From the NCBI GenBank assembly GCA_963514005.1, contig OY740792.1, positions 36,022,001-36,086,000 on the forward strand: a stretch of 64,000 nucleotides of DNA, written 5' to 3'. Of the stretch, positions 890 to 60,700 are shown piece after piece (within the stretch, counting starts at the first letter, position 1; each line of letters opens with the position of its first letter). Made by a program: the position numbers and the translations under genes. A model generated the notes under the pieces. It made no database searches, was not told the DNA's origin, and saw only the letters and a list, made by a program, of their open reading frames with translations. This DNA comes from Raja brachyura (taxonomy: Eukaryota).

Positions 890-1610
890 AGAGTCAAAAG
901 AGAGTCAAAGAGTCAAAAGGGTTTATTGTCATGTGTCCCTGACAGGACAATGAAAATCTTTCTTTGCATAGCACAACAGAACATAGAAGGCATTGACCAC
1001 AATTCTATACGTAAATACACCCATGAATTAATAAATTAATAAAGTGCAAATAGCAGATGGAGGGATATTAATGTTCAGAGTTCCGAGCTAAGTTTTATAG
1101 CCTGATGGCTGTGGGGAAGTAGCTATTCTTAAACCGGGTTGTTGCAGTCTTCAGGCTCCTGTACCTTCTACCTGAAGGTAGCAGGGAGATGAGTGTGTGG
1201 CCAGGGTGGTGTGGGTCCTTGATGATGCTGCCAGCCTTTTTGAGGCAGCGACTGCAATAAATCCCCTCGATGGAAGGTAGGTCAGAGCCGATGATGGACT
1301 GGGCAGTGTTTACTACTTTTTGTAGTCCTCTCCTCTCCAGGGCGCTCAAGTTGCCGAACCAAGCCACGATGCAACCGGTCAGCAAGCTCTCTACTGTACA
1401 CCTGTAGAAGTTAGAGAGAGTCCTCCTTGACAGACCAACTCTCTGTAATCTTCTCAGGAAGTAGAGGCGCTGATGAGCTTTCTTAATAATTGCATCTCTC
1501 GGACCAGGAAAGATCTTCACAGATGTGCACGCCCAGGAATTTGAAGCTCTTGACCCTTTCAACCATCGACCCGTTGATATAAACAGGACTGTGGGTCCCC
1601 ATCCTACTCA
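890..1610 (-). mobile_element. Rex/Babar-type LINE 3' fragment
   Basis: ORF 1095-1562 (KKAHQRLYFLRRL...FYRCTVES...IIKDPHHPGH...LLPSGRRYRS...RFKNSYFPTAIRL) is the C-terminus typical of this clade. Short tandem tail (AGAGTCAA)n near 890-917. Similar shorter pieces at about 7220-7370, 17800-18050, 38740-39030 and 45100-45250. Confidence 0.8.
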
Positions 1611-6750: not shown

Positions 6751-7586
6751 CATGGAACATGGATAGGTGACGTTTCACAGAGTGCTGGAGTAACTCAGCG
6801 GGTCAGGCAGCATCTCTGGAGAACATGGATAGATGACATTTCAAAGAATGCTGGAGTAACTCAGCAGGTCAGGCAGCATCTCTGGAGAACATGGATAGGT
6901 GATGTTTCGCATCAGGACCTTTCTTCAGCCTGATTGTGGCGGGGGGGGGGGGGGGGGGGGAGGAGGAGGAAGGGCAGGGCAAACCCTGGCAGGTAGTAGG
7001 TAAACACAGGGGAGGGGAGTGTACCTGAGGAACCTGAAGGTTTAGAGGGATACGGACCAAGTGCGGGCAGGTGGGACTGGTGTAGATGGGACATTTTAGT
7101 CGGTGTGGGCAAGTTGGGCCGAAGGGCCTGTATCCACACTGTATCACTCTATGACTCCGTGAAAAGACGGAAAGTGTGTGGCAAAAGGATTTTTCCTGGC
7201 CTTGGTCCAACCATCTGCTGATCAAAGACCCGCACCACCCTGACCACGCTCTCATCTCGCTGCTGCCATCGGGAAGAAGGTACAAGAGCCTGAAAACCGT
7301 GACCTCCAGGTTCAGGTACAGCTTCTTCCCAGCAACCATCAGGCTCTTGAACACTGCACAACACTAACCCCAGCAACTGACATCTTCTATCAATTGTCTT
7401 TGGCCTGTAATAGGAAAGATGTTTGTCAAGCTGGAAAGGGCACATAGAAGATTGCCAAAACGTGAGAGTCCAAGCTATAGGGAGAAGTTGAGTAGGCTGG
7501 GACTCTATTCCTTGGAGCACAAGAGGATGAGGGGTGATCTTATAGAGATATTTATATTTATGAGAGAAATAGATGGGGTGAATGCA

Positions 7587-11640: not shown

Positions 11641-14399
11641 TGATCTGTCAGATGAATTTTCATTGGTCCTTTTATCGTTATGCTTATGTATAGGCAGTCG
11701 TAGAGTTTTCTGTTTTGTTCAGGAACAATTCAGTTTTGAGTTCAATTTTCCATTTCTGCCGATCATAATTCTCACCTGAATGAACATACAGAACTTGCTA
11801 GTACATAACAACCCTACTAATTATTCTTTAGCTACACGTGTTTCATTATGTTTTCTCTCTTTTTACACACCTTGCCATGTAATTAATTATTATTTGTTAC
11901 AATTCAAAAGCCCAGAGTTAAAAGCAGTCATGAACATGGCTTAAAATCCATCCTTTTAAACTAGTATTTAAAAAAAAAACTATTTTTCGTTCAACAAAAT
12001 TAATATTGAAATAGTATTAGAGACACAAGGAGCTGGAATCTTATGCAAAGCACATGTATGCTGGATGCCAATTAAAAGTTGACGCCTATTTTATACAGGA
12101 GCACATCCATCAGATTTTGAGGTATTTATGTTAGATAGGAAGTGCTCCCATAAGACATACCTCCTTCTTTATTCATATTTCTACGTTATATCTGATGTTG
12201 TGAAAGGCTTCTGACGAAAATGCTCACCACAACTGAAAATAATCACTTGTCAGCATTAAATTAATGTTTTAAAAAAGCATACCCCATGTTAAAGAGGATT
12301 TGAGATTATCTGAGGCAGCTCTTGGATATTCCAATGAATTATTCGGGAGAAGGAGGTAAGAGTGAAATCTTGTATTCCCGCTTGTTCTGACAGATGGCTC
12401 GAAGCTGAACATTCATTACTACTGACACACAGGGATAGTAATTACTGCTGGAAGTCTACAGCTAGAAACACTACTAGCTACAAGCACCATTCAATTCTTC
12501 TCACAAGGTATCTGAATAAAGCTAACTCTCACATCAAGGGATGTTTAAGATGAAGAGACGACACAGATGGAAAGAGAGGAAGATAAAGATCAAGTTTAAA
12601 CAATGGACTTAGAAACGGGAGAGAGACTACGACTGATAGCGACTAAGTTCATTATGTGCGGTAGAGTTGATTAAGAAGCCTCATCAAGGTGAGGGGCACA
12701 ACAGGGAAAGTGCTGATGCAGCACAACACAGGGAGACGGACAGTGCCAGCAGTGTGATGGAGCCATGTTTCGGGACTAACTGCCTCATGTTGGGAAGTGA
12801 AACGTCACCAATCCATTTTCTCCAGAGATGCTGACTGACCCACTGAGTTACTCCAGCATTGTGTGCTTATTTTTAGCAAGAGTTTACATCATGTTTAGAG
12901 TTTAGAGATGCAGCAAGGAAACAAGCCCGTCGGCCCACCGTTCCCACGCCGACCATCGATCACCCGTTTACACCAGTTCCAAGTTATCCCACTGTCACAT
13001 CCACTCTCTACATACTAGGGGGCAATTTACAGAGGCCTATTAACCTACAGACCCGCACGTCTTTGGGATGTGGGAGGAAACCGGAGCACCTGGATGAAAG
13101 CCACACGGTCACAGGGAGAACATGCAAATTCCACACACAGACAGCACCCAAGGTCTGGATCAAACCCGGGTCTCTGGTCCTGTGAGGCAGCACCTCTACC
13201 AGCTGTGTCACCCCTTAATGGTGTCCCTGCACAAGCTACCCAATGTCTATTAGAGTAAGCGAGTAATCAGTATCTTCCAGAGGGAAAAAAGGGCTTTGAA
13301 ATGAAAATTAAACAGTACCTACTTAAAATGTATGTTGCCAACCAGGATGTATTCAATAAACACGTACGGGTATATAGAAAGAAATTGGAGCCTAATGCAG
13401 AGTTGTAAGTAATTACCAGGAAATGTGCTGCCTAAGCAGTAATAAGAATGATTGGTTCATGCATTAGACAATTAAAATATAGCCTCTCAGTGCCAGAGAC
13501 CTGGGTTCAATCCTGACCTCAGGTACTGTGTGTGTGTGGAGTTTGCACGTTCTCCCTGTGACTGCGTGGGTTTCCTCCGGTTGCTCCGGTTTTTCCCCAC
13601 ACCACAAAGACGTGTGGGTTTGCAGGTTAATTGTCCTCTGTAAATAGCCGCTAGTGTGCAGGGAGTGGATGTGGAAGTGGGATGACATAGAACTATTGTG
13701 AACAGGTGATCGACGGTCGGCGGGACTGGGTAAACCAAAGGCCCTGTTTCCACACTGAACCTTTCATTCAGAAAATTAGAATTGAACAGGGAAAGACACA
13801 AAGTGCTGGAGTAACTCAGCGGGTCAGGCAGAATCCTTGGAGAGCATGGATAGGCGACATTTCGAGTCAGGCCCCTTTCCGCTTTCCTTGCTAAACTAGC
13901 ATTTGCATTTCCTTGCTTCTGCACTGAGAATTGAGCAGCACCTATTCTAAAGGTAGACAAAATTGCTGGAGAAACACAGCGGGTGAGGCAGCATCTATGG
14001 AGCGCAGGAAATAATCGACGTTTCGGGTCTTGCACCCGCACCTATTCTAAATGTATTTTACTAAACATGATGCATTTAGCAAATGCGAATATATGGAAAA
14101 CAATTGGGCAGAAAACAGAATGCAGAATTTAACGTCATTAACAGGAAATGTGCTGTCCAAACGGTAACACGAATTAGTGTATTATAAACATGTAGATAAT
14201 TGAAATATTGTCAACCAAGTATTCAGGGCTGCAGAATGTTAATAAGGCAGCAAACAGATTTAGAAGCTTAAATGGCTTGTAATGTACAACAATACTGAAA
14301 ACATACAGGTGCCTGCAAGGCTAGACTGCAGACATATTGATGTATTAAGCCGAGGCAAGTGCATCGCTATCCGACTGAAAAAGAATCTCAGGCACTTAC

Positions 14400-14798
14400 C
14401 TGGCGGTTTGACCTTGACCTCCAGGATGTTTGACGATTTTTCCGCTTTCCTCACCCACTGCTCCATCTGATTCTGATGCCAAAGCTCTGCAATGCACTGG
14501 TATCTCCCCGCCTCCAAATCACTAGCCTTGGAGACGGTCAGCCGGACGTTATTGGGCGTCTTTGTTATCAACGTCTTGCTTTTAAAATTTGTGACCTTAT
14601 CTCCCCAAATGATAGACGTGTCGCGGGCAAATGTGACCATGTCGTAGATGTTGCCTGATTGGGATGACTGGAATTTCCACCTCCACGATACGGACACCCA
14701 GGAAGGATAGTTTGGTCTGATGAAGCACTGGAGTTCAAACGCGTTACCGTACGTCACCGAGGGTGTCCGTGTTATTGCTGTGACGCTGAAACCACTCT
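14400..14798 (-). CDS. IGSF3: IGSF3-like coding exon, Ig V-domain 5
   Basis: 399-nt exon, acceptor gactttacAG, donor GTaagt. Encodes ESGFSVTAITRTPSVTYGNAFELQC...VSWRWKFQ...NNVRLTVSKASDLEAGRYQCIAELW...NILEVKVKPP. Junction G|AG (Glu) is in frame. Confidence 0.92.
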
Positions 14799-19303: not shown

Positions 19304-20718
19304 TAAGTGACAAAGGCCGGAGGTTTAAAGGAGACAAAAGGATGGGGAGGGGGAGGCAGACAAGTGTAAATTAACTTTTTTTGCACAAAGGATGGTGGTT
19401 GTATGGAACGAGCTGCCAGAGGAAATAGTTGAGGCAGGTACTATCACAACATTTTAGAAACATTTTGACAGGTACATGGATAGGATAGGTTCAGGGGGAT
19501 ATGGGCCAAATGCAGGCAGGTGGGATCAGTGTTGATAGGGCATGTTGGGCGGCATGGGCAAGTTGGGCCTGTTTCCACACTGCATGGCTCTATGACGCTA
19601 TTTGTGGAAAGAGGAGGAGTAAAAGGGAACGGGGGGGGGGGGGTTTGACGATGGAAGATGGCAGATAAAGAAAATGTCAGATAAAACCAAGAATTGCCAA
19701 AAATCAGGGGCAAATATGATGCTATTTCTCCAAGTCCGTGGTAACTACAACGGGACTAGTCTAAATATTATCCATTTCTGCACATGTATATTGAAAAGAT
19801 GCCATTTTGAGGATGATAATTCTGTTTTCAAAATTGTCTGATTTGGTCGTGAAGCAACAGAATCTTACTGGAGATAAAATGCTTCATCGTTCCAGCTACA
19901 ATGTGTGCACTTTTTATTGCCTGGAGTCCTGATATGATGGGTCAGCCCACATGATTTCCAACGTTAGAGAACTCCAGTTTGACCCTGTGGCGAACCCAAC
20001 CCCAATTATTTCCTCTCGAAGATTAAGTGTCAGGTTATCGCAAACGCAGAGTTACCTATAGAAACTGACTTTTGCACTGACCGTGAATAATTACAGTTGG
20101 AAAGAATATATTGTTGTTGCGGATGGGTGAACACTTTCCTTTGGGCTTATCTCCCCACAGGGACATTTCACTATCAATTCCCTCTTTAAACAAAAAATAA
20201 AGTACTGGATTGTTTGTTGTATTCCGGGTGCTCCGGTTTCCTACCACATCCGAAAGACGTGCGGGTTTGTAAGTGAATTGGCCTCTGAAAATTGCCCCCT
20301 GGTGTGTAGGGAGTGGATGAGAAAGTGGGATAACATAGGACCAGTGTGAATGGGTGATCAATGGTCGGCATGGACACAGTGGGCCACAGGGCTTGTTTCC
20401 ACACTGTACCTCTAAACTTGTAGAACTCATTGCCATGGAAGGCTGTGGAGGGCAGGTCAATGGATATTTTGATGGTGTAGATTGACAGATTCTTGATTAG
20501 TACGAGTGTCAGGGGTTATGGGGAGAAGGCAGGAGAATGGGGTTGAGAGGGAAAGATGGATCACCCATGATTGATTTAATTGTGGAGTAGACTTGATGGG
20601 CCGAATTGCCTAATTCTGCTCCTGTAAAATGCTGGAATAACTCAGCGGGTCAGGCAGCATCTTTGGAGAAAAGAAATAGGTGACGATTTGGGTCGAGACC
20701 TTTCTTCAGGGGAGAGGT

Positions 20719-20772
20719 GGGGTGCAAGATTGCAACCTTCCCGTGGTCCGCCCTGTTTCGACTAATGCAATC
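20719..20772 (+). ncRNA. Compact HDV-like self-cleaving ribozyme (predicted)
   Basis: P1 GGGGTG/CGCCCT with a G1-U wobble, P2 GATTGCA/TGCAATC (7 perfect bp), P3 ACC/GGT, L3 TTCCCGT, P1.1 partner G20755, minimal P4 region TTTCGA, J4/2 C(20762)TAA. All elements are in the canonical nested double-pseudoknot order. Confidence 0.8.
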
Positions 20773-20855
20773 AACTCGACGTGCACAAACAGAAGATCAA
20801 ATAGAACAAGTTGTCCAACTACTTTAGGCTGTGCACGCCACACGAAAGAAGAAGA
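20719..20855 (+). mobile_element. 137-bp non-autonomous retroposon (SINE-like) with 5' HDV-like ribozyme, 3' stem-loop and (GAA)n tail
   Basis: Perfect 11-bp TSD AGGGGAGAGGT (20708-20718 and 20856-20866). Tail GAAAGAAGAAGA. It interrupts a Penelope remnant. 3' stem CGTGCACA (20780-87) pairs with TGTGCACG (20830-37). Confidence 0.85.
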
Positions 20856-21468
20856 AGGGGAGAGGTAAACTAGATGGTTCAGAAAGACTCAGAGCCGGCA
20901 CCCATGACCAAGGAAAAGTGATGCTCACAATGGTCCATTGTTGGCTGTGGAAGAGGTGATAATGAAGGGATATGAACAGTAAAACTAGCAGCTCGACTAG
21001 GGTGAGGGAGGGATGGGGAGAGAGGGAATGCGAGAGTTACTTGAAATTAGAGAAGTCTATTTTCATACTACTCGGGTGTAAGCTGCCAAAGCGAAAAATG
21101 CGGTGCTGTTCCTCCAATTTCCATGTGGCCTCATTCTGATGGAGGAGGCCCAGGATAGAAATGTCAGTATGGGAGCGGGAAGGGGAGTTAAAATGTTTGG
21201 CAAACCGGAGATCACGTAGATAAAGGCGGACTGAGCATGAGTGTCAAGCGAAACGATCGCCCAGTCCGTGCTTGGTCTCGCCGATATATAGGAGCACTCA
21301 CCTAGAACAGCGAATACAGTAGATGAGGTTGGAAGAGGTACAAGTGAACCCCTGCCTCACCTGAAAGGGCTGTCGGAGTCCCTGAATGGAGCTGAGGAAG
21401 GAGTTATAGAGGCAGGTTGTAGGAGAAAATCTGCAAGGGAGGATAAATAATTTTGAACAGTTACTTAC

Positions 21469-21858: not shown

Positions 21859-23140
21859 CTGTAACAAAACACGGACATACATTTAACGGTGACTGCTTGA
21901 GAATCCTAGGTTCAGGATTTGCAACTGAAAGGCAGGAAACATGAATAGGAAAAGTTTAGAAAGATAGAGTTTAGAGGGATAGTTAGATAGAGCTCTAGGG
22001 GCTAGTGGAATCAAGGGATATGGGGAGAAGGCAGGCACGGGTTATTGACTGAGGACGATCAGCCATGATCACAATGAATGGCGGTGCTGGCTCCAAGGGC
22101 CGAATGGCCTCCTCCACGTATTTTCTATGTTTCTATGTTTCTATACAGACCAAATGCAGGGAGCTGGGAAGAGTGGAGGCAGACGTTATCAGCTCTTCCC
22201 CAGCCAACAAATGGGCCATTATGGGCTCCACCCTTCCTTGGTCATCATGTTACCAGCCTTGATTTGTTTCCGCCTTTACCTATGTCCAGTTCCCCCTGCT
22301 CTACTTTTAGTCAGAAGAAAGGTTCAGACCCGAAACATCACCCGCTCCTTTTCTCCAGGGTTGCTGCCTGCCCAGCATTTTGTGTCTAGCTTCAGTATAA
22401 ACTGGCAATCGCAGTTCCTTCCTACACTAATGGAGGCATCTTGGTTGTCATGGGCAAGATGGACTGAAGGGCCTGTTTCCATGTTGTAAGACTCTAAAAA
22501 AATGAAGCCTGTGATTGTCCAAGACTTACTTGAACATTCAAAATGTAGAAGCAAGGAAATGTACATCCTGGTTTGCACAAAAGGACACAAAGTGTTGCAG
22601 TAATTCAACAGGTTAGGCAGCATCTCTGGAGAAAAGGAGGTGGTGTTTTGGGTCAGGACCCTTATTCAGACCAAAGATGACCAGGAGGGGCAGGACAAGG
22701 CCGGGTAGGTAACAGTTGGATACAGGTGTGGAAGATTTTGTGATAGGCAGACAGTAGGATAAAGACCAGAGATACAAATACAGAAGGTCTGAGTCAAAAT
22801 TACTGATTGGACCCGCAACCTCTTTCTCTCCCCTTCCACCTACATTTCCTCTTCTAGCTTCATAATTAGCAACTCTTCATAAGTTCATAAGTTATAGGAG
22901 CCGAATTGGGTCATTCGGCCCATCAAGTCTATTCCGCCATTCATTCATGGCTGATCTATCTTTCTCTCTCAACCCCTTTCGCCTGCCTTCTCCCCATAAC
23001 CTCTGACACCCATACTCTTCGATCCTTTTGCATCTGATTTCAGGTCGGGAACCTTCATTATACGCTATTCTTTCAGACTTTGGCAATAGTGATTTTGATG
23101 TACCTTGTTGAGGAGTAATCATTCTAAAACAATGCCTTAC

Positions 23141-23548
23141 CCGTGGCTTTTACGTTGACGGTGGTCCTATCGGAGGGCTTGGTGGCTATAGTGTACCAGG
23201 ATTTATCTGGGTCTTGGATCCACTCTCTGGCCTCGCAGTAGAAGGTCCCCTGGTCAAACGGTTGAAGTCTGTAGATGGTGAGTCTGTAGGACGTAGCCCC
23301 AGTTTTGTCCAGTCGGACGTCGCCCGAAGTGTGCCTCTGCTTGTACGACTCTCCGGGACGTAGGATGAAATCCCGGGTCAGCGAAATGACCTTGAGATTC
23401 TGATCTGCCTTCTGGAGATACCACGTGACGGCCACGTGTGTGTGGTACGGCGTCTGCTCAGAAACCTCGCACACCAGCTCCAGCGAATCTCCCTCCACTT
23501 TATTCAGCTCCTGGGCTACAGATGTTGCACGGAGAGTATCTGGAATAA
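23141..23548 (-). CDS. IGSF3: IGSF3-like (EWI family) coding exon, Ig V-domain 2
   Basis: 408-nt exon. Acceptor ctctcccAG (CT at 23549-50 on +), donor GTaagg (AC at 23139-40). Encodes VIPDTLRATSVAQ...LELVCEV...VTWY...DQGTFYCEAREWIQDPDKSWY...VNVKAT, with the Ig C-W-C triad and the EWI motif. Closely resembles recalled IGSF3 domain 2. Confidence 0.93.
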
Positions 23549-24018
23549 CTGGGAGAGAACAGAACAGGACAGGAATGGTCAATAGAACATATTATAAACA
23601 ATTATTTATTCTACAGAGACTGTACGAGATTCAATGATAGCTCAGCTTTGGGCAGCACAGTGACATAGCTCATAGAGATTTAGTTTAGACACACAGAGCT
23701 AGGATAACTCAGTGGTTCAGGCAGCATCCATGGAGAAAAATAGGTGATGTTTTGTATCGGAACCCTTCTTCACACTGAAGTCTGACCCGTTTCAGACCCT
23801 GTCTGTTCTTTTTTTCCAAAGATGTTGCCTGACCAGCTGAGTAACTCCAGCACTTTGTGTCTATCTTCAGTATAAATCAGCATTAGCAGTTCCTTCCGAC
23901 GCATAAAGATTTAGTTTAGTTTAGAGATATGCCAATTTCAGAAAAGACAACATTTATAACATTATTTTCAGATATTTGTCACAATGTTGTAGATATAATA
24001 AAGACAATTCACTTGCGT

Positions 24019-24243: not shown

Positions 24244-25740
24244 TGACCCCCCCCCCCCCCCCCCCAGAACCAGAGGCACCGAACCGGACGGTATGCCGAA
24301 CGAGGAGGCTGGAACGCGCAGTTACAATCCCACACTCCGGGGGCTTGCTCGGTTCGGAAGAATCTCCGGTAGTCCAGGACGGCGGACGCCCGTGACGGAG
24401 AGGTTGAGCCACGTGGACTGGCTCGCTCAGGTCCAAGCGGGCCGGTTTCAAATGAGCCATAGAAACCAAATGGGAGGCTAGCCATTTCAGGCCAGCCTCC
24501 CATGTCCAAATCGACAGAACAGGACGAGAAAGGGACATTCATATGGGCGCTGCAAGGGTGACCTGTGGGAGTTACGGCGACGAAATACGTACGGGCAGCC
24601 CATCAGTGGCAGTGGCACATGGGAAGGGGCCACACCATGACGCGACGTTGGGACGGGAGACAGGGCGTCGACCCTCTCCCGCAAGTGAATCAGCATCGAT
24701 GACGGGAGTTCCTGGGACCCATCAGCAGCAGGGACAAACTCCCCGGGGATGGTGAGGGAGCACCATATACCAACTCCGTGGGGGACGACGACAGATCCTC
24801 CTTGGGGGCCGTCCAAATACCATGGCCCATGGCAACTCGTCCATCCACCCAGGGCCCATGAGACGAGCCTTCAGGGTGGTTTCCAGACAGCGGTGGAACC
24901 GCTCCACCAACCCATTTGACTGGGATGGTACACGGTCGAGTAGAGCTGCGTCCCCAACAGGCGGGCCATGGCGGACCACAGTTCAGACGTGAACTGGGCG
25001 CCCCTGTCGGACGTGATGTGAAATGCAACCCCGAAGCGGGCAATCCAAATTGCCACGAGGGCACCAGCGCAAGACTGAGTTGAAGCGTCCGTGAGCGGGA
25101 TGGCCTCCGGCCACCGCGTAAAACGGTCAACCACCGTAAGCAGGTGTGAAACACCCTGGGACGGAAGCAGTGGCCCCACGATGTTCACGTGCACGTGTTC
25201 CAACCGCCGGCGTGGCGCTGTGAAGTCTTGAACGGGCGCCCGGACGTGTCGATGCAGCTTTGATGTCTGGCACGGGATACACGCCCGGGCGCAGCCAGCG
25301 ATCTGCTTCCGAAGTCTGTGCCGCATATACCTTGCGGCCACCATAGCGACCGTGGCCCGGATGGATGGGTGGGCCTGCCCATGGATCACCTCAAAGACGT
25401 GACTGCGCCAGGCTGCCGAAACGATAGGCCTCAGCTGACCCGTGGATACATCGCAGAGGATGGAACCCGAGGGACCCAACGGCACGTCCTCAAGCACCAA
25501 GCCAGAGATCACGGTGCGGTACACCGGCATCTCATCGTCCGCCAGCTGGGCCGCCACCAAGGCGGAGTAATCTAACCCCGACGACGTGTTAAGCACGGCT
25601 GCAATTCCAGACGGGACAAAGTATTCGCCACTAGGTTGCATTTCCCGGCGATGTGTCGGACATCCGTTGTATACTCGGAAATAGCCGCCAGCTGGCGCTG
25701 CTGGCGGGCGGACCAAGGGTCTGAGAGCTTAGCGAAATGG
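24019..25740 (-). mobile_element. Gypsy (Ty3/Gypsy) LTR retrotransposon remnant: RNase H C-terminus, integrase, PPT and 3' LTR; 5'-truncated and frameshifted
   Basis: Minus-strand translation gives the RNase H end (SDPWSARQQRQLAAISEYTTDVRHIAGK), the H2C2 zinc finger (HGQAHPS...CIPC) and the integrase core (VNIVGPL, VDRFTRWPEAIP, ITSDRGAQF, QSNGLVERFHR), split over several frames. RH-then-IN order is Gypsy-type. Confidence 0.9.
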
Positions 25741-41220: not shown

Positions 41221-41526
41221 GGGAAGGGGGGGGGAGGGGGGAGGGGGGGGGGGGGGAGGGAGAGGGGGGGAGGGAGAGGGGGGGAGGGAGAGGGGGGGAG
41301 GGAGAGGGGGGGGAGGGAGAGGGGGGGAGGGAGAGGGGGGGAGGGAGAGGGGGGGAGGGAGAGGGGGGGAGGGAGAGGGGGGAGGGAGAGGGGGGGAGGG
41401 AGAGGGGGGGAGGGAGAGGGGGGGAGGGAGAGGGGGGGAGGGAGAGGGGGGGGAGGGAGAAGGGGGGAGGGAGAAGGGGGGAGGGAGAAGGGGGGAGGGA
41501 GAAGGGGGGAGGGAGAAGGGGGGGAG
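41221..41526 (+). repeat. Pure polypurine minisatellite, unit of about 14 bp (GGGGGGAGGGAGAG)
   Basis: 306 bp containing only G and A, with tandem G3-G7 runs. Confidence 0.95.
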
Positions 41527-41889
41527 CGAGAGGAGTGGGGACACTTTTAAGAAATATAATAAAGTTTAACGGGCATTTTATCTACCGGTCGGTTTTCCCA
41601 GGTCCTGAAAACTCCAATGAGCCAATCAAAATGCCCAGTCAGCGAAGGAGATTGCCTATGGCTGCCCTCGACTGCCTGTAACTAAATAGCGACCCCACTC
41701 CACTGCACTACGAGTCAAAAAGAACCATGCCGAACAAATTGTACTGAAAATGTTTCGGCGACCCTTGAGCATGAAGGAGAGTTCCAGTGACCACATAGGA
41801 TCTCCCAGGGCCTCCTGTCGACCATGCTGTGAGTTTGGGTCGAGGGCAAACTCATCTAAACTCACAGTTGCCACAGTGGGACAGCCCCT
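41221..41889. mobile_element. Harbinger-like MITE, right portion, adjoining a G-rich minisatellite
   Basis: Right end AGTGGGACAGCCCCT followed by TTA resembles the TIRs at 19114 and 39053. No left TIR seen; it abuts the CR1 fragment. Confidence 0.5.
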
Positions 41890-55582: not shown

Positions 55583-57745
55583 CTGGTTCACTGCAGAACT
55601 CAGACAGCTCCGAAAGCCTAAAGAGGAGGCCTACAGGAGCGGGGATGCAGGCCTCTACAGGCAGGCCAAGTACCAGCTGAGAAGAAGAATCAGAGCTGCC
55701 ATGGAAAGGTTCTCTGAGAAGTTGAGGAGCAAGTTCTCAGCCAGCGACTCTTGTTCAGTTTGTAAGGGCTTGCAAGAAATTACCAGCTACAAGAGGAAAG
55801 CCCCCCGCTCTTTGGACAATCGTCAGGTGACCAACGACCTGAATGAGTTTTACTGCAGGTTTGAAATTCAGAAACGTAAGCCTGGTATCCCCTTCCCCCC
55901 TCCCCAACCAACACAGCCAGACCCCAGTCTACAATGAATGGACCCTGCACCCTCTCCTTCCCATTCATCACTTCACACCGACTTAAGGCAAGACTCCAGT
56001 ATGAAAAGACAGGACCATTTCCCACCCCAACCAACACTTCACACCCACTCACAGCCTGACCTCAGTCTGAAAAGACTGTGCCTTTCTACACCCACCCCCC
56101 TCCAATCACCACTTCACACCCAATCATCCACACCCTCTGTGCTGCACAACATAACTTATCCAATATCAACAATAAAAATAGAGGTGGAGAAGCTTTTCAG
56201 AGGACAAAAGGGCCGGAAATCTCCAGGACCTGACAATGTTTCCCCCTCTACTCTTTACCTCTGTGCCAAACAGCTGACACCGGTCTATACAGACATTTTT
56301 AACCAGTCCCTGCAAACATGTACTGTCCCTGCCTGCTTCAAAGTCTCCACTATTGTCCCTGTACCCAAAAAGGCAAGGATTACTTGTCTTAATGACTACA
56401 GGCCTGTCGCACTGACCTCTGTAGTCATGAAGACACTCGAAAGGCTTGTGCTGGCTAAGCTGAAAAATATCACAAACTCCCTGCTGGACCCTCTGCAGTT
56501 TGCATATCGGGCTAATAGATCTGTGGATGATGCAGTCAGCCTGGGCCTGCACGTCATCCTACAGCACCTAGACCGCCAGGGGACCTATGCGAGGATCCTG
56601 TTTGTTGATTTTAGCTCTGCATTCAACAACATTGTGCCAGAGCTACTAAACTTCAAACTTTCCGAGTTGACTGTGGCTGAACCCCTCTGTCAGTGGATCA
56701 CCAACTTCCTGACAGACAGGAAGCAGCATGTTATGCTGGGAAAGTACATCTCGGACCCGCAAACACTCAGCATAGGAGCATCGCAAGGCTGCGTACTCTC
56801 TCCTCTCCTCTCTCTACACCAACGATTGCACCTCCACAGACACCTCTGTCAAAGTTCTCAAGTTTGTGGACGACACAACCCTGATTGGACTGATCCAGGA
56901 TGGGGAGGAATCTGCCTACAGACAGGAGGTGTCACAGCTGGCCTCCTGGTGCCGTATCACCAACCAAGAGCTCAATGCTCTTAAGACAGTGGAATTGATT
57001 GTAGACTTTAGGAGAGATCCCCCTCTCCTCACCCCATTCACTATCAACAACACCACAGTCACATCTGTGGAGTCTTTTAAGTTCCTGGGAACCATCATCT
57101 CCAAGGACCTTAAGTGGGGGGCTACCATCGACTCCACAGTCAAAAAGGCACAACTGAGGATGTACTTCCTGTGGCAGCTGAGGAAGCACAATCTGCCACA
57201 GGCAATGATGGTCCAATTCTACATGGCCATCGTAGAGTCTGTTCTCACCTTCTCCATCATGGTCTGGTTTGGCTCAGCCCCCAAGCACGACACCTGGAGG
57301 CTGCAGCAAATCATCCGATCAGCAGAGAAGATTATTGGCTGCAACCTTCCCTCCATTGATGAACTGTACACTGCAAGGTCCAGGAAGCGAGCGGGTAAGA
57401 TCATCTCTCATCCCTCTCACCCTGCCACAAAATCTTTGAATCGCTTCCCTCTGGAAGGCGACTCCAGACTGTCAGAGCTGCCACAGCCCGACATAAAAAC
57501 AGTTTTTATCCACGAGTAGTTGCTCTCGTCAACAGCCTAAAATCTGTAGCCTCCCTGTGATCTGGTATTTTGTTGGTTCACATGCTTGATCAATGGTGTT
57601 TTATCATTAATTTCTTATTATTATTATTAATGTTTAGTGTTTTCCGAGTCATTCGTAACTGTCACTGTATGTAATGTTGTTACTTGTGGGTGGAGCACCA
57701 AGGCAAATTCCTTGTATGTGAATACTTGGCCAATAAACTTACTTA
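55583..57745 (+). mobile_element. Rex1/Babar-type non-LTR retrotransposon, 5'-truncated, with a frameshifted reverse transcriptase
   Basis: ORFs 55938-56984 and 56866-57519 carry KSPGPD, NDYRPVALTS, QFAYR, FVDFSSAFN, QGCVLSPLL, KFVDD and FKFLG. Frameshift near 56810-56820. 3' UTR ends ATACTTGGCCAATAAACTTACTTA. Confidence 0.9.
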
Positions 57746-60700
57746 AAATGTTGCTCGCTGTTTAGAGAGTCATACAGCATGAAAACAGGCCCCTCAGCCC
57801 ATCCTGCCTACACTGACCAACATGCCCTGTCTACACTAGTCCCAACTACCCAGGTTTGGCCGATATCCTTCTAAACCTATCCTATACATGTATTAGTCCA
57901 AATGTCTTTCTAATGCTATTAATGTACCTGCATCAGCTACCTCCTCCAGCAGCTCAATCCATATACCCACCACCAATGAAAATGTTCAGAGGTTCTAGGA
58001 GCAGAATTAGGCCATTCGGCCCATCAAATCTATTTCACCATTCAATCGTGCCTTCCCTCTCAACCCCATTCTCCTGCCTTTCCCCTATAATTCCTGTCAC
58101 CTGTACTAATCAAAGTTGCCCCTCAGTTTCCTATTAAATCTTGCCCTCCTCACCTTAATACAAAGGGAGTGGACTTTTCTGCAGTTTTTGGACTTTCCTT
58201 CAATACTTCTGATTCAGAGAGTGATATTTAGTTTGGAGATACAGCAAGGAAACGGGCCCCACAGTGGCCAGCAATCACCGGTTCACACTAGTTCAAGAGT
58301 CAATATGCACCGAAACAGAACAATGACATTTTTACTTGCAGTTCTGTGTTATCCCACTTTCCCATCCAACTCCCTACACACTGGGGACAATTTTACAGAC
58401 GCCAATTAACCTACAAACCTGCATGTTTTTGGGAGGTGGGAGGAAGGTGGAGCATCAGGAGTAAACCTATGTGGTCACTGGGAGAATATGCAAACTCCAC
58501 ACACACCGACAGGATCGAACCCGGGTCTCAGGTGCAGCGAGGCAGTGGGTCTACCTGCTGCTCCATTGTGTCGCTGCTGTACACCCATCTACTCTGGTAA
58601 CAGATGCCGATAGTCCTTACGCAAAGAGCACAATCTAAAACTAACACTTGATACGTAGTATTGTGTGGAATTTACCCAGCCTCCAGCAATGTTTACCAGA
58701 ATGAGAAAGAATTTTGTGTAACAGCATTAATTGTAGTGTTATCTTTGCAAGTCTGTCTTGGGGGAAAAAAAGTCATTGTTGGCGCAGCAACTTACTGTCA
58801 TTATGACAATCGATTCATCAAAAGAAGACATTACTCCCGCATACGGAATTGTATAGACAGTGGGACCAGACAGCTGTCTCAGACGGAGGGCAATTTACAG
58901 GAAAAAGTCAGTCCTGCCTTATGCGGATGTCAGCTAATAAAAAACCCATTAATGCTCTTCAATCTCTCTCTAGGTATACATCACCAAAGTGGTTCATCCA
59001 ATATAGTAAATCCTTGCAACAACGGACCGCTCTATAACTGATAGACACAAAACGCTGGAGTAACTCAGTGCGTCAGGCAGCATTTCTGGAGAAAATAGGT
59101 GCCGTTTAGGTCGAGTACCTTCTTCAGATTCTGTAAACCCACAAACGGATATAACCTATACAACGGATTTTGGTGATAGCGGACCAAGGCTCCCGTTGCA
59201 TCACCCCACCCCCCCCCCCCCCCCCCCTCACCCCCACTTCCGTCAGTTACCCAACGTGGCGGGAACTTCCGGTTGCAGGAGCGGAGAGAGCGAGCAGCAC
59301 AAAGGTGGCGTGAATACCAGGCCCGTCCCCAGCGCACTGTATGTCGGGGCGCTGCGACTCCCAGGCCTGCGATTACCCGCTTGTCCCCCCCCCCCCCAAC
59401 AAATGCAAAATTCCGATTAATTCAGTCTGCTTAAATATAGAAGTGAGGCAACTTATAACATTTAAAAACTATACTTTAGTTTAGTTTATTATTGTCATGT
59501 GTACCGAGGTGCAGTGAAAAGCTTTCTTTGCTGCGTGCTATCCTATCAGCAAAAAGACTATACGTATGAAAAAAGAATATCTGCTGTTCCTTCGTACAAA
59601 TGTGTTTAGGTTCTTGTTTATTATTGTTATGTGTACCAAGGTACAGTGAAAAGCTTTGATTTCTATGCTATCCAATCAGATCAGTTAATAGAACAAAACA
59701 CAACAAAGTCGAACTTAGTATAATAGGTAGGGCAAAGGGGAAGATGCAGAGTGCAGAATATAGTTGAGGCAGGTACTATCGCAACATTTAAGAAACATTG
59801 CACCCGAAAGTCGGAAGTACCCGACTGCTGGTGTTGTCTGTAAGGAGTTTGTACGTTCTCCCCATGACCTGCGTGGGTTTTCTCCAAGATCTTTGGTTTC
59901 CTCCCACTCTCTAAAGACGTGCAGGTTTGTAGGCTATTTGGCTTGGAATAACAGTAAATTGTCCCTGGTGTGTGCAGGATGGTGTTAACGTGTGGATGGC
60001 AGGTCGGCATGGACCCGGTGGGCCGAAGGGCCTGTATCTCTAAACTAAACATTTAGACAGGGCCCGTTTCTACGCTGTATCTCTAAACTAAATATAATAT
60101 TGAAAGTTGCTATATCATGGCAATATCATATTCATTGCTACAAAAAGTATGAAAGATTATCAAATAAATGACAAGCGTAGGGGGGCATATAAACTAACAA
60201 TAGTAGGAAAATGCAGAAATGGAAATTCAATTTATGAATACAGTACTAACATAAACGTAGCAAACGACTTTTGAATTTTGTGCAGTTATCACATATCCAA
60301 ATGCAGCTTTCAGAAGGCTTTTGCTGGGGTATTAAATAAGAAGCTTCTCTGTACAATTGAAGCCCTAGGTATTAGTGGAAAGCTAAAATTCTGAATTGAG
60401 AATGAATTTGTGGGTGGATTTGGATAAGCCTGGAGTGCCACACGCATAAATGCTGAATGTCGACTGAAGGCAATCTGCATCTACACCTTGTGTGAGGAGA
60501 CCCAGTTGGTAGGTTGGCTCATAAATATTGGTCAGAAACAGATTGTGAGGAGGATTTACAATAGACTGCATCTACACTGTTTGTATTACTCATTATCACC
60601 TTCCCCACAGCCAACAATGGACCATTGAGGGCTCCACCTTTCCTTGACCATGATTGCTGGCTTTGATCTGTCTTTTTGCATTATCTTTCATTAATTTGTT

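What the first reader, a model, noticed from the sequence alone, without database searches (positions are those of the whole stretch)
20708..20866. Ribozyme-headed SINE: 137-bp retroposon that begins exactly at the cleavage site of a compact HDV-like ribozyme
Seen in sequence: an 11-bp TSD (AGGGGAGAGGT) brackets a 137-bp insert. Its first 54 nt fold as an HDV-like nested double pseudoknot. P1 is G20719-G20724 with C20749-T20754, including the hallmark G1-U wobble; the 7th pair is a C-C mismatch. P2 is GATTGCA/TGCAATC and P3 is ACC/GGT. L3 TTCCCGT keeps the U20/G25 equivalents, P1.1 is a single C-G pair, P4 is tiny (TTTCGA), and the catalytic-C equivalent C20762 is followed by TAA. The insert's first base is G1, which is what reverse transcription of a self-cleaved RNA would give. 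The 3' half has an 8-bp stem (CGTGCACA/TGTGCACG) and a (GAA)n tail, and I see no pol III A/B boxes. Established knowledge: HDV-like ribozymes form the 5' ends of R2, RTE and trypanosomatid L1Tc/ingi retrotransposons and their short derivatives (R2 SIDEs, SIDER/NARTc). Inference: this is a promoter-less SINE released from read-through transcripts by self-cleavage and mobilised by an Ingi/Vingi- or RTE-type LINE. I do not know of such a family described in cartilaginous fish. It is antisense to IGSF3, so it should not cut that pre-mRNA.
Basis: partly seen in the sequence, partly recalled or inferred. Interest (0 to 1): 0.92.

Follow-up and report, generated by a model that had tools for sequence, protein, structure and literature searches.

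The report
Ribozyme-headed mini-retroposon in fish intron
This 137-base insert is one worn copy of a very abundant short jumping element whose first 54 bases have the sequence hallmarks of a miniature HDV/CPEB3-type self-cutting RNA placed exactly at the element's own 5' end; LINE-type elements are known to use this trick, but here it appears in an unusually small vertebrate form and cutting has not been tested.

Summary
An exact 11-bp repeat (20708-18 / 20856-66) brackets a 137-bp insert inside an older repeat whose sister copies read straight through the empty site. Contigs from public runs of at least three coded organisms show the insert is a high-copy dispersed family. Its similarity starts at 20717-20719 and stops at 20855-57, next to unrelated flanks.

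The HDV-like fold is real in the sequence. My descriptor hits once in 128,000 positions, at 20719, and never in 300 shuffles. Two Rfam HDV models align end to end with G1 at 20719, though far below their thresholds.

The family's majority letters strengthen the fold. C20725G restores the 7th P1 pair, C20741A makes L3 TTCACGT as in CPEB3, and T20820A restores a 7-bp upper stem in the 3' hairpin. No A/B box, tRNA or small-RNA head was found.

The element lies antisense in an intron of an Ig-domain gene; I did not test whether that gene is IGSF3.

The scan has already noted this family many times on other DNA of this genome. It is a new variant of a known kind (SIDE / bipartite non-autonomous LINE).

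The parts
20708..20718 (.). Left target-site duplication AGGGGAGAGGT. The first 2 nt, AG, could instead be microhomology with the tail.
   Evidence: It is identical to 20856-66. Host-repeat sister copies read ...GGGGAGAGG(G)AA(A/T)C... without a break.
20719..20772 (+). Minimal HDV/CPEB3-type ribozyme fold without P4. P1 is 20719-25 with 20748-54, J1/2 is 20726-27, P2 is 20728-34 with 20766-72, and P3 is 20735-37 with 20745-47. L3 is 20738-44. G20755 would pair with C20740 as P1.1. The linker is 20756-61, and J4/2 is C20762-TAA-20765. The predicted cleavage is 5' of G20719.
   Evidence: Sequence. The descriptor is unique in the window and gave 0 hits in 300 shuffles. Rfam RF00094 and RF02682 align over their full length with G1 at 20719. 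Majority letters G20725 and A20741 improve the fold.
20773..20779 (+). Linker AACTCGA between the two structured modules. Three of its 7 positions (20776, 20777, 20779) vary within the family.
   Evidence: table 3.
20780..20837 (+). 3' hairpin, the presumed LINE reverse-transcriptase recognition module. The lower stem is 20780-87 with 20830-37 (8 bp). The upper stem is 20808-14 with 20818-24, which is 7 bp with the family's majority A at 20820 and broken by T in this copy. The loop is CCA.
   Evidence: No variant at or above 10% lies in the lower stem. The main polymorphism, 20817, is in the loop.
20838..20857 (+). 3' end CCACACGA followed by the (AAG)3-4 tail. The last AG overlaps the right TSD.
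   Evidence: Family contigs end at 20855-20857 and then continue into unlike sequence (table 8, records 3, 7, 25).
20856..20866 (.). Right target-site duplication AGGGGAGAGGT.
   Evidence: Contig coverage collapses just after it.
20626..20709 (+). Older, very abundant ~84-bp repeat that was the insertion target. Its longer subfamily resumes at 20858 and runs on to about 20980.

Best explanation
This is a decayed, intronic, antisense copy of an abundant non-autonomous non-LTR retroposon built from just two RNA modules.

The 5' module (54 nt) is a minimal HDV-like ribozyme without P4. Its core matches the mammalian CPEB3 ribozyme:
- a G1.U wobble at the base of P1;
- a 7-bp P1 in the family majority;
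- a 3-bp P3;
- L3 reading UUCACGU;
- a one-G-C P1.1 followed by U;
- a 4-nt J4/2 beginning with the candidate catalytic C.

The 3' module is a two-stem hairpin plus an (AAG)n tail, of the kind that 'stringent' LINE reverse transcriptases bind.

Proposed cycle:
1. A copy is transcribed as part of a longer host or read-through transcript (inferred).
2. The ribozyme cuts 5' of G1 and frees an RNA that begins exactly at the element's first base (inferred from the motif).
3. A partner LINE's protein binds the 3' hairpin and tail and primes reverse transcription at a nick in a purine-rich target (inferred).
4. Copying runs to the cleaved 5' end. This gives full-length copies with a uniform 5' G and 9-11-bp target duplications (shown).

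This particular copy has lost one P1 pair and one upper-stem pair, so it is probably inert.
For: - **Insertion with TSD:** the insert sits in an older repeat whose sister copies show the empty site.
- **High-copy dispersed family:** unitigs of 115-140 nt begin exactly at 20719 (table 8, records 1, 2, 18). Long contigs with unrelated upstream DNA start matching at 20717-18 (records 9, 10, 17). Joints 20606>20719 and 20623>20719/20718 appear in three runs. 3' ends fall at 20855-57, followed by unlike DNA (records 3, 7, 25).
- **Motif beyond chance:** the descriptor gives 1 hit per 128,000 positions and 0 full or 3 relaxed hits in 300 shuffles.
- **Independent models:** the Rfam HDV_ribozyme and HDV-F-prausnitzii models align over their full length with G1 at 20719. 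Their E-values of 3.3 and 8.3 are computed over 4227 families. My own rough division gives about 1e-3 per family for the one family named beforehand.
- **Majority letters strengthen the structures:** C20725G makes the 7th P1 pair. C20741A makes L3 equal to CPEB3's U20/C22/A23/G25 pattern (PMC4836649). T20820A restores the upper 3' stem. With these letters the nested minimum-energy fold of the head is P1+P3, with the P2 strand left free.
- **Variation avoids stems:** family-level variable sites fall in 2 of 66 paired versus 10 of 61 unpaired positions, p=0.014.
- **No alternative head:** no A/B box above chance, no tRNA, and no Rfam small-RNA hit.
- **Precedent:** ribozyme plus 3' end is sufficient for R2 SIDEs (PMC3414825). 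Natural HDV-like ribozymes without P4 exist (bioRxiv 10.1101/2023.06.13.544163, citing Riccitelli 2014).
Against: - No cleavage assay and no RNA 5'-end data exist. All runs laid were assembled contigs.
- The Rfam scores (15.6 and 11.1 bits) are far below the gathering scores (50 and 44), and the CPEB3 model gave no hit.
- The whole-element fold energy is no better than shuffles, z = +1.17.
- I wrote the descriptor after seeing the sequence, from remembered consensus features.
- The majority letters come from contigs of coded organisms that may not be the window's own species.
- The variable sites are largely CpG sites, so the stem-versus-loop contrast is weak evidence.
- A uniform 5' end is also what a fixed transcription start would give.
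- No partner LINE with the same head or tail was found in the window.
Confidence: 0.65

Rival explanations
1. This is the same abundant retroposon family, but the HDV-like head is not, or is no longer, a working ribozyme. On this view the head is a relic of a parent LINE's 5' UTR, or it acts as an internal promoter or protein-binding site (compare Pr77 of L1Tc, which is both promoter and ribozyme). The uniform 5' end would then come from a fixed transcription start.
For: A uniform 5' end does not discriminate between the two readings. The Rfam scores are sub-threshold. The missing P4 and the weak one-pair P1.1 could make catalysis poor. Pr77 is a precedent for a dual-role 5' end (PMC3383444).
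Against: No A/B box or known small-RNA head was found. The majority letters keep every core position of the HDV/CPEB3 fold and improve the pairing. The motif is far from chance. SIDEs with the same architecture do self-cleave (PMC3414825).
Confidence: 0.22
2. The family is a SINE or retropseudogene family derived from an undescribed cellular small RNA. Its resemblance to HDV-like ribozymes would then be coincidental.
For: The size (about 125 nt plus tail) and an ACA three nt before the tail loosely recall H/ACA snoRNAs.
Against: No Rfam family matches at E<=10 other than the HDV models and noise. There is no H box in the hinge. The 5' half does not form an H/ACA-type pocket hairpin. The HDV descriptor match is specific.
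Confidence: 0.06
3. The insert is a 5'-truncated 3' end of a LINE, or a chance direct repeat around ordinary sequence.
For: 11-mer direct repeats are common in this window. LINE 3' ends carry hairpins and short repeat tails.
Against: Contigs from other loci start at the same base, not at scattered positions, and none runs further upstream (table 8 and joints). The window holds no longer element sharing the 3' part.
Confidence: 0.03

Closest known systems
R2 SIDEs and R2/R1 hybrid SIDEs of Drosophila (PMC3414825)
   Same: Both are non-autonomous elements made only of a 5' HDV-like ribozyme and a 3' end bound by a LINE's machinery. Neither is transcribed by pol III. Both have a 5' end defined by self-cleavage of a co-transcript. 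The P3/L3 core is similar: the R2 motif CCUCCUCGUGG (PMC5035012) against CCUUCACGUGG here.
   Different: SIDEs are site-specific in rDNA, low in copy number, longer, and carry a full P4 and a long J1/2. This family is dispersed, very abundant, about 137 nt long and has no P4. Its parent LINE is unknown. Self-cleavage was shown for SIDEs but not here.
Bipartite non-autonomous LINEs of the RTE, Ingi and R2 clades, e.g. RTE-N families and RTESINE (PMC5786205)
   Same: Both have a 5'-end plus 3'-end architecture without a small-RNA head. That paper links retention of the true 5' end to a terminal ribozyme.
   Different: Those families are defined by sequence identity to a known parent LINE, and none could be found here. 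The listed examples are 195-470 bp, and their ribozymes are predicted only for some RTEs.
NARTc / SIDER and the Pr77/L1TcRz head of trypanosomatid L1Tc/ingi elements (PMC3185411, PMC4035085, PMC3383444)
   Same: In both, short non-autonomous derivatives share with their LINE a 5' terminal HDV-like ribozyme, and they are abundant and dispersed.
   Different: Those are protist elements. Their 77-nt head doubles as an internal promoter, and there is no sequence relation. No promoter role has been shown or excluded here.
Mammalian CPEB3 ribozyme (PMC4836649)
   Same: The two share core letters: U20, C22, A23 and G25 in L3; a P1.1 of one G-C plus a U-U; a 4-nt J4/2 starting with the catalytic C; and a G1.U wobble. 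About a fifth of family copies even read CGAA in J4/2.
   Different: CPEB3 is a single-copy intronic ribozyme with a P4 hairpin and is conserved in mammals. The Rfam CPEB3 model does not hit this element. The shared letters are core features of the whole HDV-like class, so they do not show common descent.
Minimal HDV-like ribozymes without P4: drz-Mtgn and theta ribozymes (bioRxiv 10.1101/2023.06.13.544163, citing Riccitelli 2014)
   Same: Both have the double-pseudoknot core with the P4 domain replaced by a short linker.
   Different: Those come from metagenomes and gut phages and process tRNA trailers. None is reported as the head of a vertebrate retroposon.
Other ribozyme-bearing short retroelements: twister variants in Schistosoma non-LTR elements (PMC8501958); hammerhead retrozymes (PMC7761336)
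   Same: In each, a self-cleaving RNA is used to process a retroelement transcript.
   Different: They use different ribozyme classes and, for retrozymes, a circular-RNA life cycle.

Membership tests
HDV-like self-cleaving ribozymes | Nested double-pseudoknot order P1-P2-P3-L3-P3'-P1'-(P1.1)-(P4)-J4/2-P2' | tested here: met
   P1 has 6 bp in this copy and 7 bp with the majority G20725. P2 has 7 bp and P3 has 3 bp, in the right order with the right crossings. P4 is absent, as in the minimal variants.
HDV-like self-cleaving ribozymes | Core letters: G1.U at the cleavage site, L3 U...C.CG with a C to pair with the G after P1', and a catalytic C in J4/2 before P2' | tested here: met
   G20719.T20754; L3 TTC(C/A)CGT; G20755; C20762-TAA. 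No variant at or above 10% occurs at these positions in the family. The consensus features are partly from memory and partly from PMC4836649.
HDV-like self-cleaving ribozymes | Score above the curated Rfam gathering threshold | tested here: not met
   RF00094 scored 15.6 bits against a threshold of 50, and RF02682 scored 11.1 against 44. RF00622 (CPEB3) gave no hit. These models expect a P4 and do not score P2 or P1.1.
HDV-like self-cleaving ribozymes | Covariation supporting the helices | tested here: inconclusive
   Only summary variant tables were available. G20750A turns U.G into U-A, C20725G restores a pair, and no stem-breaking variant reaches 10% in the head. No alignment of copies could be made.
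HDV-like self-cleaving ribozymes | Divalent-ion-dependent self-cleavage 5' of G1, leaving a 5'-OH | not testable with these tools
   This needs in vitro transcription or 5'-OH-specific RNA sequencing.
Non-autonomous non-LTR retroposon (SIDE / bipartite non-autonomous LINE) | Target-site duplication and a simple-repeat 3' tail | tested here: met
   A 9-11-bp TSD and an (AAG)3-4 tail. The empty site is seen in sister repeats.
Non-autonomous non-LTR retroposon (SIDE / bipartite non-autonomous LINE) | Many dispersed copies with the same ends | tested here: met
   contigs and joints from four runs of three coded organisms.
Non-autonomous non-LTR retroposon (SIDE / bipartite non-autonomous LINE) | 5' and 3' ends shared with an autonomous parent or partner LINE | tested here: inconclusive
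   No match was found in this 64-kb window. The only LINE RT here (55938-57519) has a different 3' end.
SINE in the strict sense (pol III head from tRNA, 5S, 7SL or snRNA) | Internal pol III promoter or a small-RNA-derived head | tested here: not met
   ARAGORN found no tRNA. The best A-box match was 5 of 9 and the best B-box match 6 of 9, both reached by most shuffles. No Rfam small-RNA hit.
RTE/Rex3-type tail | 3' end like GCG(GAA)2(GATG)n with TSDs (PMC6274825) | tested here: inconclusive
   The element ends ...CACGA(AAG)3-4. It has GAA-type repeats after a CG but no GATG repeats. This is a resemblance only.

The most novel reading that the evidence does not exclude
CPEB3-type ribozymes without P4 may be working parts of a hyper-abundant vertebrate retroposon. 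If so, a cartilaginous-fish genome would carry a very large number of potential self-cleavage sites. Sense-oriented intronic copies would cut host pre-mRNAs and so shape orientation bias. Retroposons of this kind would also be the sort of source from which the mammalian CPEB3 ribozyme was later domesticated.
Probability: 0.12. Interest if true: 0.85.

Novelty: new variant of a known kind. Interest (0 to 1): 0.64.

Why it matters
Ribozyme-processed retroelements are established for R2, RTE and L1Tc/ingi and their short derivatives. The documented cases are mostly invertebrate or protist, and the short derivatives are low in copy number or site-specific.

A dispersed, very abundant element of about 137 nt in a jawed vertebrate would add three things:
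- It would show how little a non-autonomous retroposon needs: a 54-nt ribozyme and a hairpin with a repeat tail.
- It would give HDV-like ribozymes without P4 a eukaryotic home and a function.
- It would offer a concrete, testable model for where single-copy vertebrate ribozymes such as CPEB3 might have come from.

It also predicts measurable effects on host transcripts, namely cleavage in sense-oriented copies and an orientation bias in introns. My full-text searches found no paper describing such a family in cartilaginous fish. I could not query Repbase or Dfam, so the repeat itself may already be catalogued without the ribozyme having been noticed.

Tried and rejected
- **Second copy in the window:** blastn with word size 7 and E<=10 found none. 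Other 11-mer direct repeats at about 140-150 bp spacing bracket unrelated sequence.
- **Rfam on 4 kb at E<=10:** nothing. The weak HDV hits appeared only in the 166-nt rescan. The MIR7729 minus-strand hit (E 0.045, 19.5 bits against a threshold of 92) is taken as noise.
- **H/ACA snoRNA reading:** there is an ACA 3 nt before the tail, but it was rejected for lack of an H box, a pocket hairpin or an Rfam hit.
- **tRNA or pol III head:** rejected.
- **5'-truncated LINE end:** rejected because of the shared 5' border.
- **Metagenome pattern scan for the head:** 0 matches. I did not repeat it with a looser pattern.
- **Fetching other fish loci through a transposon protein:** No alignment of copies, covariance model or partner-LINE search could therefore be made.
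- **Other (AAG)n-tailed elements in the window:** none.
- **RNA evidence:** none. The one run guessed to be RNA was judged probably DNA, and all runs were contigs.
- **Contig depth figures:** used only qualitatively, because the tool warns that they cannot rank parts of a stretch.
Full report
**1. What is in the sequence**

The exact 11-mer AGGGGAGAGGT occurs at 20708-20718 and again at 20856-20866, bracketing 137 bp at 20719-20855.
- P1 runs from G20719 to G20724 and pairs with C20749 to T20754. It includes the G1.U wobble and a U.G pair at T20723/G20750. C20725/C20748 is mismatched.
- P2 is GATTGCA with TGCAATC, 7 bp.
- P3 is ACC with GGT.
- L3 is TTCCCGT.
- A G (20755) follows P1', and C20762-TAA lies directly before P2'.

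The 'tiny P4' is not a helix. Six nucleotides (20756-61) simply link P1.1 to J4/2, so the fold has no P4. The 3' half carries the 8-bp stem 20780-87 / 20830-37, then CCACACGA and (AAG)3-4. Because the tail can be read through A20856-G20857, the TSD is 9-11 bp.

**2. It is an insertion**

The surrounding DNA is an older repeat. Its left part (20626-20709) has more than 40 relatives in the window. Sister copies of the longer subfamily, such as 60832-60576 on the minus strand, read ...GGGGAGAGG(G)AA(T/A)C(C/T)AGA... without interruption. That is the sequence obtained here once the insert and one repeat copy are removed. Both flanking copies share a T where the sisters have G, which is what a duplication would give.

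Exact 11-mer direct repeats within 60-400 bp are not rare in this window, with about 50 distinct cases. The repeat alone would therefore be weak evidence. What makes it a TSD is that it coincides with the family borders found independently in section 3.

**3. It is a member of an abundant dispersed family with a fixed 5' end**

I found no second copy in the window. Laying Logan contigs of four runs from three coded organisms on 20560-21000 at 80% likeness showed very many contigs matching only 20717-20857.
- Unitigs of 140, 124 and 115 nt begin exactly at 20719 (records 1, 2, 18).
- Three long contigs of 2485, 1765 and 657 nt carry unrelated upstream DNA and start matching at 20717-20718 (records 9, 10, 17).
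- The joints 20606>20719 and 20623>20719/20718 recur in three runs.
- At the 3' side, matches stop at 20855-57 and the contigs run on into unlike DNA (records 3, 7, 25).
- Summed contig coverage falls by about three orders of magnitude just beyond 20860. The tool warns that depth cannot be used quantitatively, so I use this only qualitatively.

There is no sign of scattered 5' truncation, which rules out a truncated LINE tail. All runs were contigs, and the one guessed to be RNA was judged probably DNA, so there is no information on RNA ends.

**4. Is the HDV-like fold more than chance?**

*Descriptor test.* I used a descriptor requiring all of the following:
- G1.U at the cleavage site;
- at least 6 bp of P1;
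- a 3-bp Watson-Crick P3;
- L3 matching T.C.CG.;
- a G after P1';
- at least 5 bp of P2;
- C.RA directly before P2'.

It hits once in both strands of the window, at 20719. In 300 dinucleotide-preserving shuffles of the whole window it never hits, and a relaxed form without P2 and J4/2 hits three times. I wrote the descriptor after seeing the sequence, from remembered consensus features, so these numbers are generous.

*Rfam test.* This test is independent of my own choices. A rescan of 20705-20870 lists five weak matches among 4227 families. Two of them are HDV models, RF00094 and RF02682, each aligned over its full length with P1 starting at 20719 and the P4 region deleted. Their scores of 15.6 and 11.1 bits are far below the gathering scores, the E-values are 3.3 and 8.3 across all families, and the CPEB3 model did not hit. 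By Rfam's criterion the element is therefore not a member.

**5. The family's majority letters strengthen both structures**

The window copy differs from nearly all contigs at three places (table 3).
- C20725>G (about 97%) makes the seventh P1 pair with C20748.
- C20741>A (about 98%) makes L3 TTCACGT. This matches U20, C22, A23 and G25 of the CPEB3 ribozyme, whose P1.1 is likewise one G-C plus a U-U and whose J4/2 is a 4-nt linker starting with the catalytic C (PMC4836649).
- T20820>A (about 99%) restores a 7-bp upper stem, 20808-14 with 20818-24, in the 3' hairpin.

With the majority letters, the nested minimum-energy fold of the first 54 nt is P1(7)+P3 at about -12.5 kcal/mol. The P2 strand is left free to pair with 20766-72, a duplex worth -7.4. 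In this copy a competing hairpin takes over.

Variants present in 10% or more of contigs lie at 20726, 20760, 20763, 20776, 20777, 20779, 20790, 20791, 20802 and 20817, all unpaired. Two further variable sites are paired: 20750, where U.G becomes U-A, and 20814. That is 2 of 66 paired positions against 10 of 61 unpaired, Fisher p=0.014. Several of these sites are CpGs, and the structures were partly derived from the same sequence, so this is weak support. T20763>G turns J4/2 into CGAA, as in CPEB3, in about a fifth of copies.

**6. What it is not**
- No tRNA.
- No A or B box above what shuffles give.
- No Rfam small-RNA family.
- The H/ACA-like ACA near the 3' end has no H box or pocket hairpin to go with it.
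- The whole-element fold energy is unremarkable, z = +1.17, as expected for a pseudoknotted RNA scored with a nested model.

**7. Context**

An Ig V-set exon lies at 23124-23582 on the minus strand (E 2.7e-11), and an Ig-like ORF lies at 14260-14757 on the minus strand. I did not test whether that gene is IGSF3.

The only LINE RT in the window (55938-57519, plus strand) ends differently, and its nearest proteins are from teleosts. No other (AAG)n-tailed element is present, so the partner LINE is unknown. The tail recalls Rex3's GCG(GAA)2(GATG)n (PMC6274825) but lacks the GATG repeats, so this remains only a lead.

**8. Mechanism and standing**

The most likely reading (0.65) is a SIDE-like element: a ribozyme to cut its RNA out of co-transcripts, plus a 3' hairpin and tail to borrow a LINE's reverse transcriptase. 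This is the logic shown experimentally for R2 SIDEs (PMC3414825) and discussed for bipartite non-autonomous RTE, Ingi and R2 derivatives (PMC5786205).
- Shown here: the insertion, the TSD, the family, the fixed ends, the motif and its conservation.
- Inferred: transcription by read-through, cleavage, and the partner LINE.

The main rival (0.22) keeps the family but denies catalysis, with a promoter-defined start or a Pr77-like dual role (PMC3383444).

**9. Novelty**

Ribozyme-headed non-autonomous retroposons are a known kind. New here are the vertebrate (reportedly cartilaginous-fish) host, the very small size, the core without P4 (so far described only from metagenomes and phages; bioRxiv 10.1101/2023.06.13.544163) and the abundance. 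My full-text searches found no description of it. Repbase and Dfam could not be searched.

The scan itself has already noted this family many times on other DNA of this genome, and three follow-ups reached the same reading. Those are unchecked AI notes, so I did not count them as evidence.

Noticed in passing
window 20626-20709 and more than 40 other places (e.g. 5759, 16204, 48263, 60832): A very abundant ~84-bp repeat (...GCTGGAGTAACTCAGCGGGTCAGGCAGCATC...CTTCTTCAG). It is often found as inverted pairs or tandem 66-bp units (6755-6902). A longer subfamily continues for about 270 bp.
   Followed up: partly
window 20572-20623: The 3' end of another high-copy element. In other loci it is followed by (ACTTATGA)n-like 8-bp repeats (loose ends), which is a CR1-type tail.
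   Followed up: no
window 20758-20822 (joints): Contigs in two runs skip about 63 nt, from inside the ribozyme linker to the upper 3' stem. This may be an internally deleted subfamily, or an assembly artefact.
   Followed up: no
window 20725-20859 (table 2, run X6): In one coded organism the head shows roughly twice the summed contig depth of the 3' hairpin. That could mean the head is shared with other elements, such as a parent LINE or tail-swapped families. The tool warns that depth cannot rank parts of a stretch.
   Followed up: no
window 23124-23582 (-) and 14260-14757 (-): An Ig V-set exon (Pfam E 2.7e-11) and a weaker Ig-like ORF on the minus strand. These are exons of the host Ig-superfamily gene, whose identity as IGSF3 was not tested.
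   Followed up: partly
window 24871-25716 (-): An ORF with integrase zinc-binding and core domains (rve, Integrase_H2C2), a remnant of an LTR retrotransposon.
   Followed up: no
window 55938-57519 (+): A LINE reverse-transcriptase ORF followed by an ORF matching Pfam ALKBH8_N. A second ALKBH8_N match lies at 1095-1562 (-). The closest database proteins are teleost proteins at up to 73% identity. The 3' end near 57700-57750 does not resemble the retroposon's tail.
   Followed up: partly
window 41226-41533: A G-rich minisatellite of (GGGGGGAGGGAGAG)n type, about 300 bp, with G-quadruplex-prone composition.
   Followed up: no
one search run table: Twenty runs from 13 studies and at least nine coded organisms hold part of the 441-bp stretch, but none holds more than 47% of its words. 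Two metatranscriptome runs, one from wastewater, hold a few words. The held parts are presumably the repeat consensus portions.
   Followed up: no
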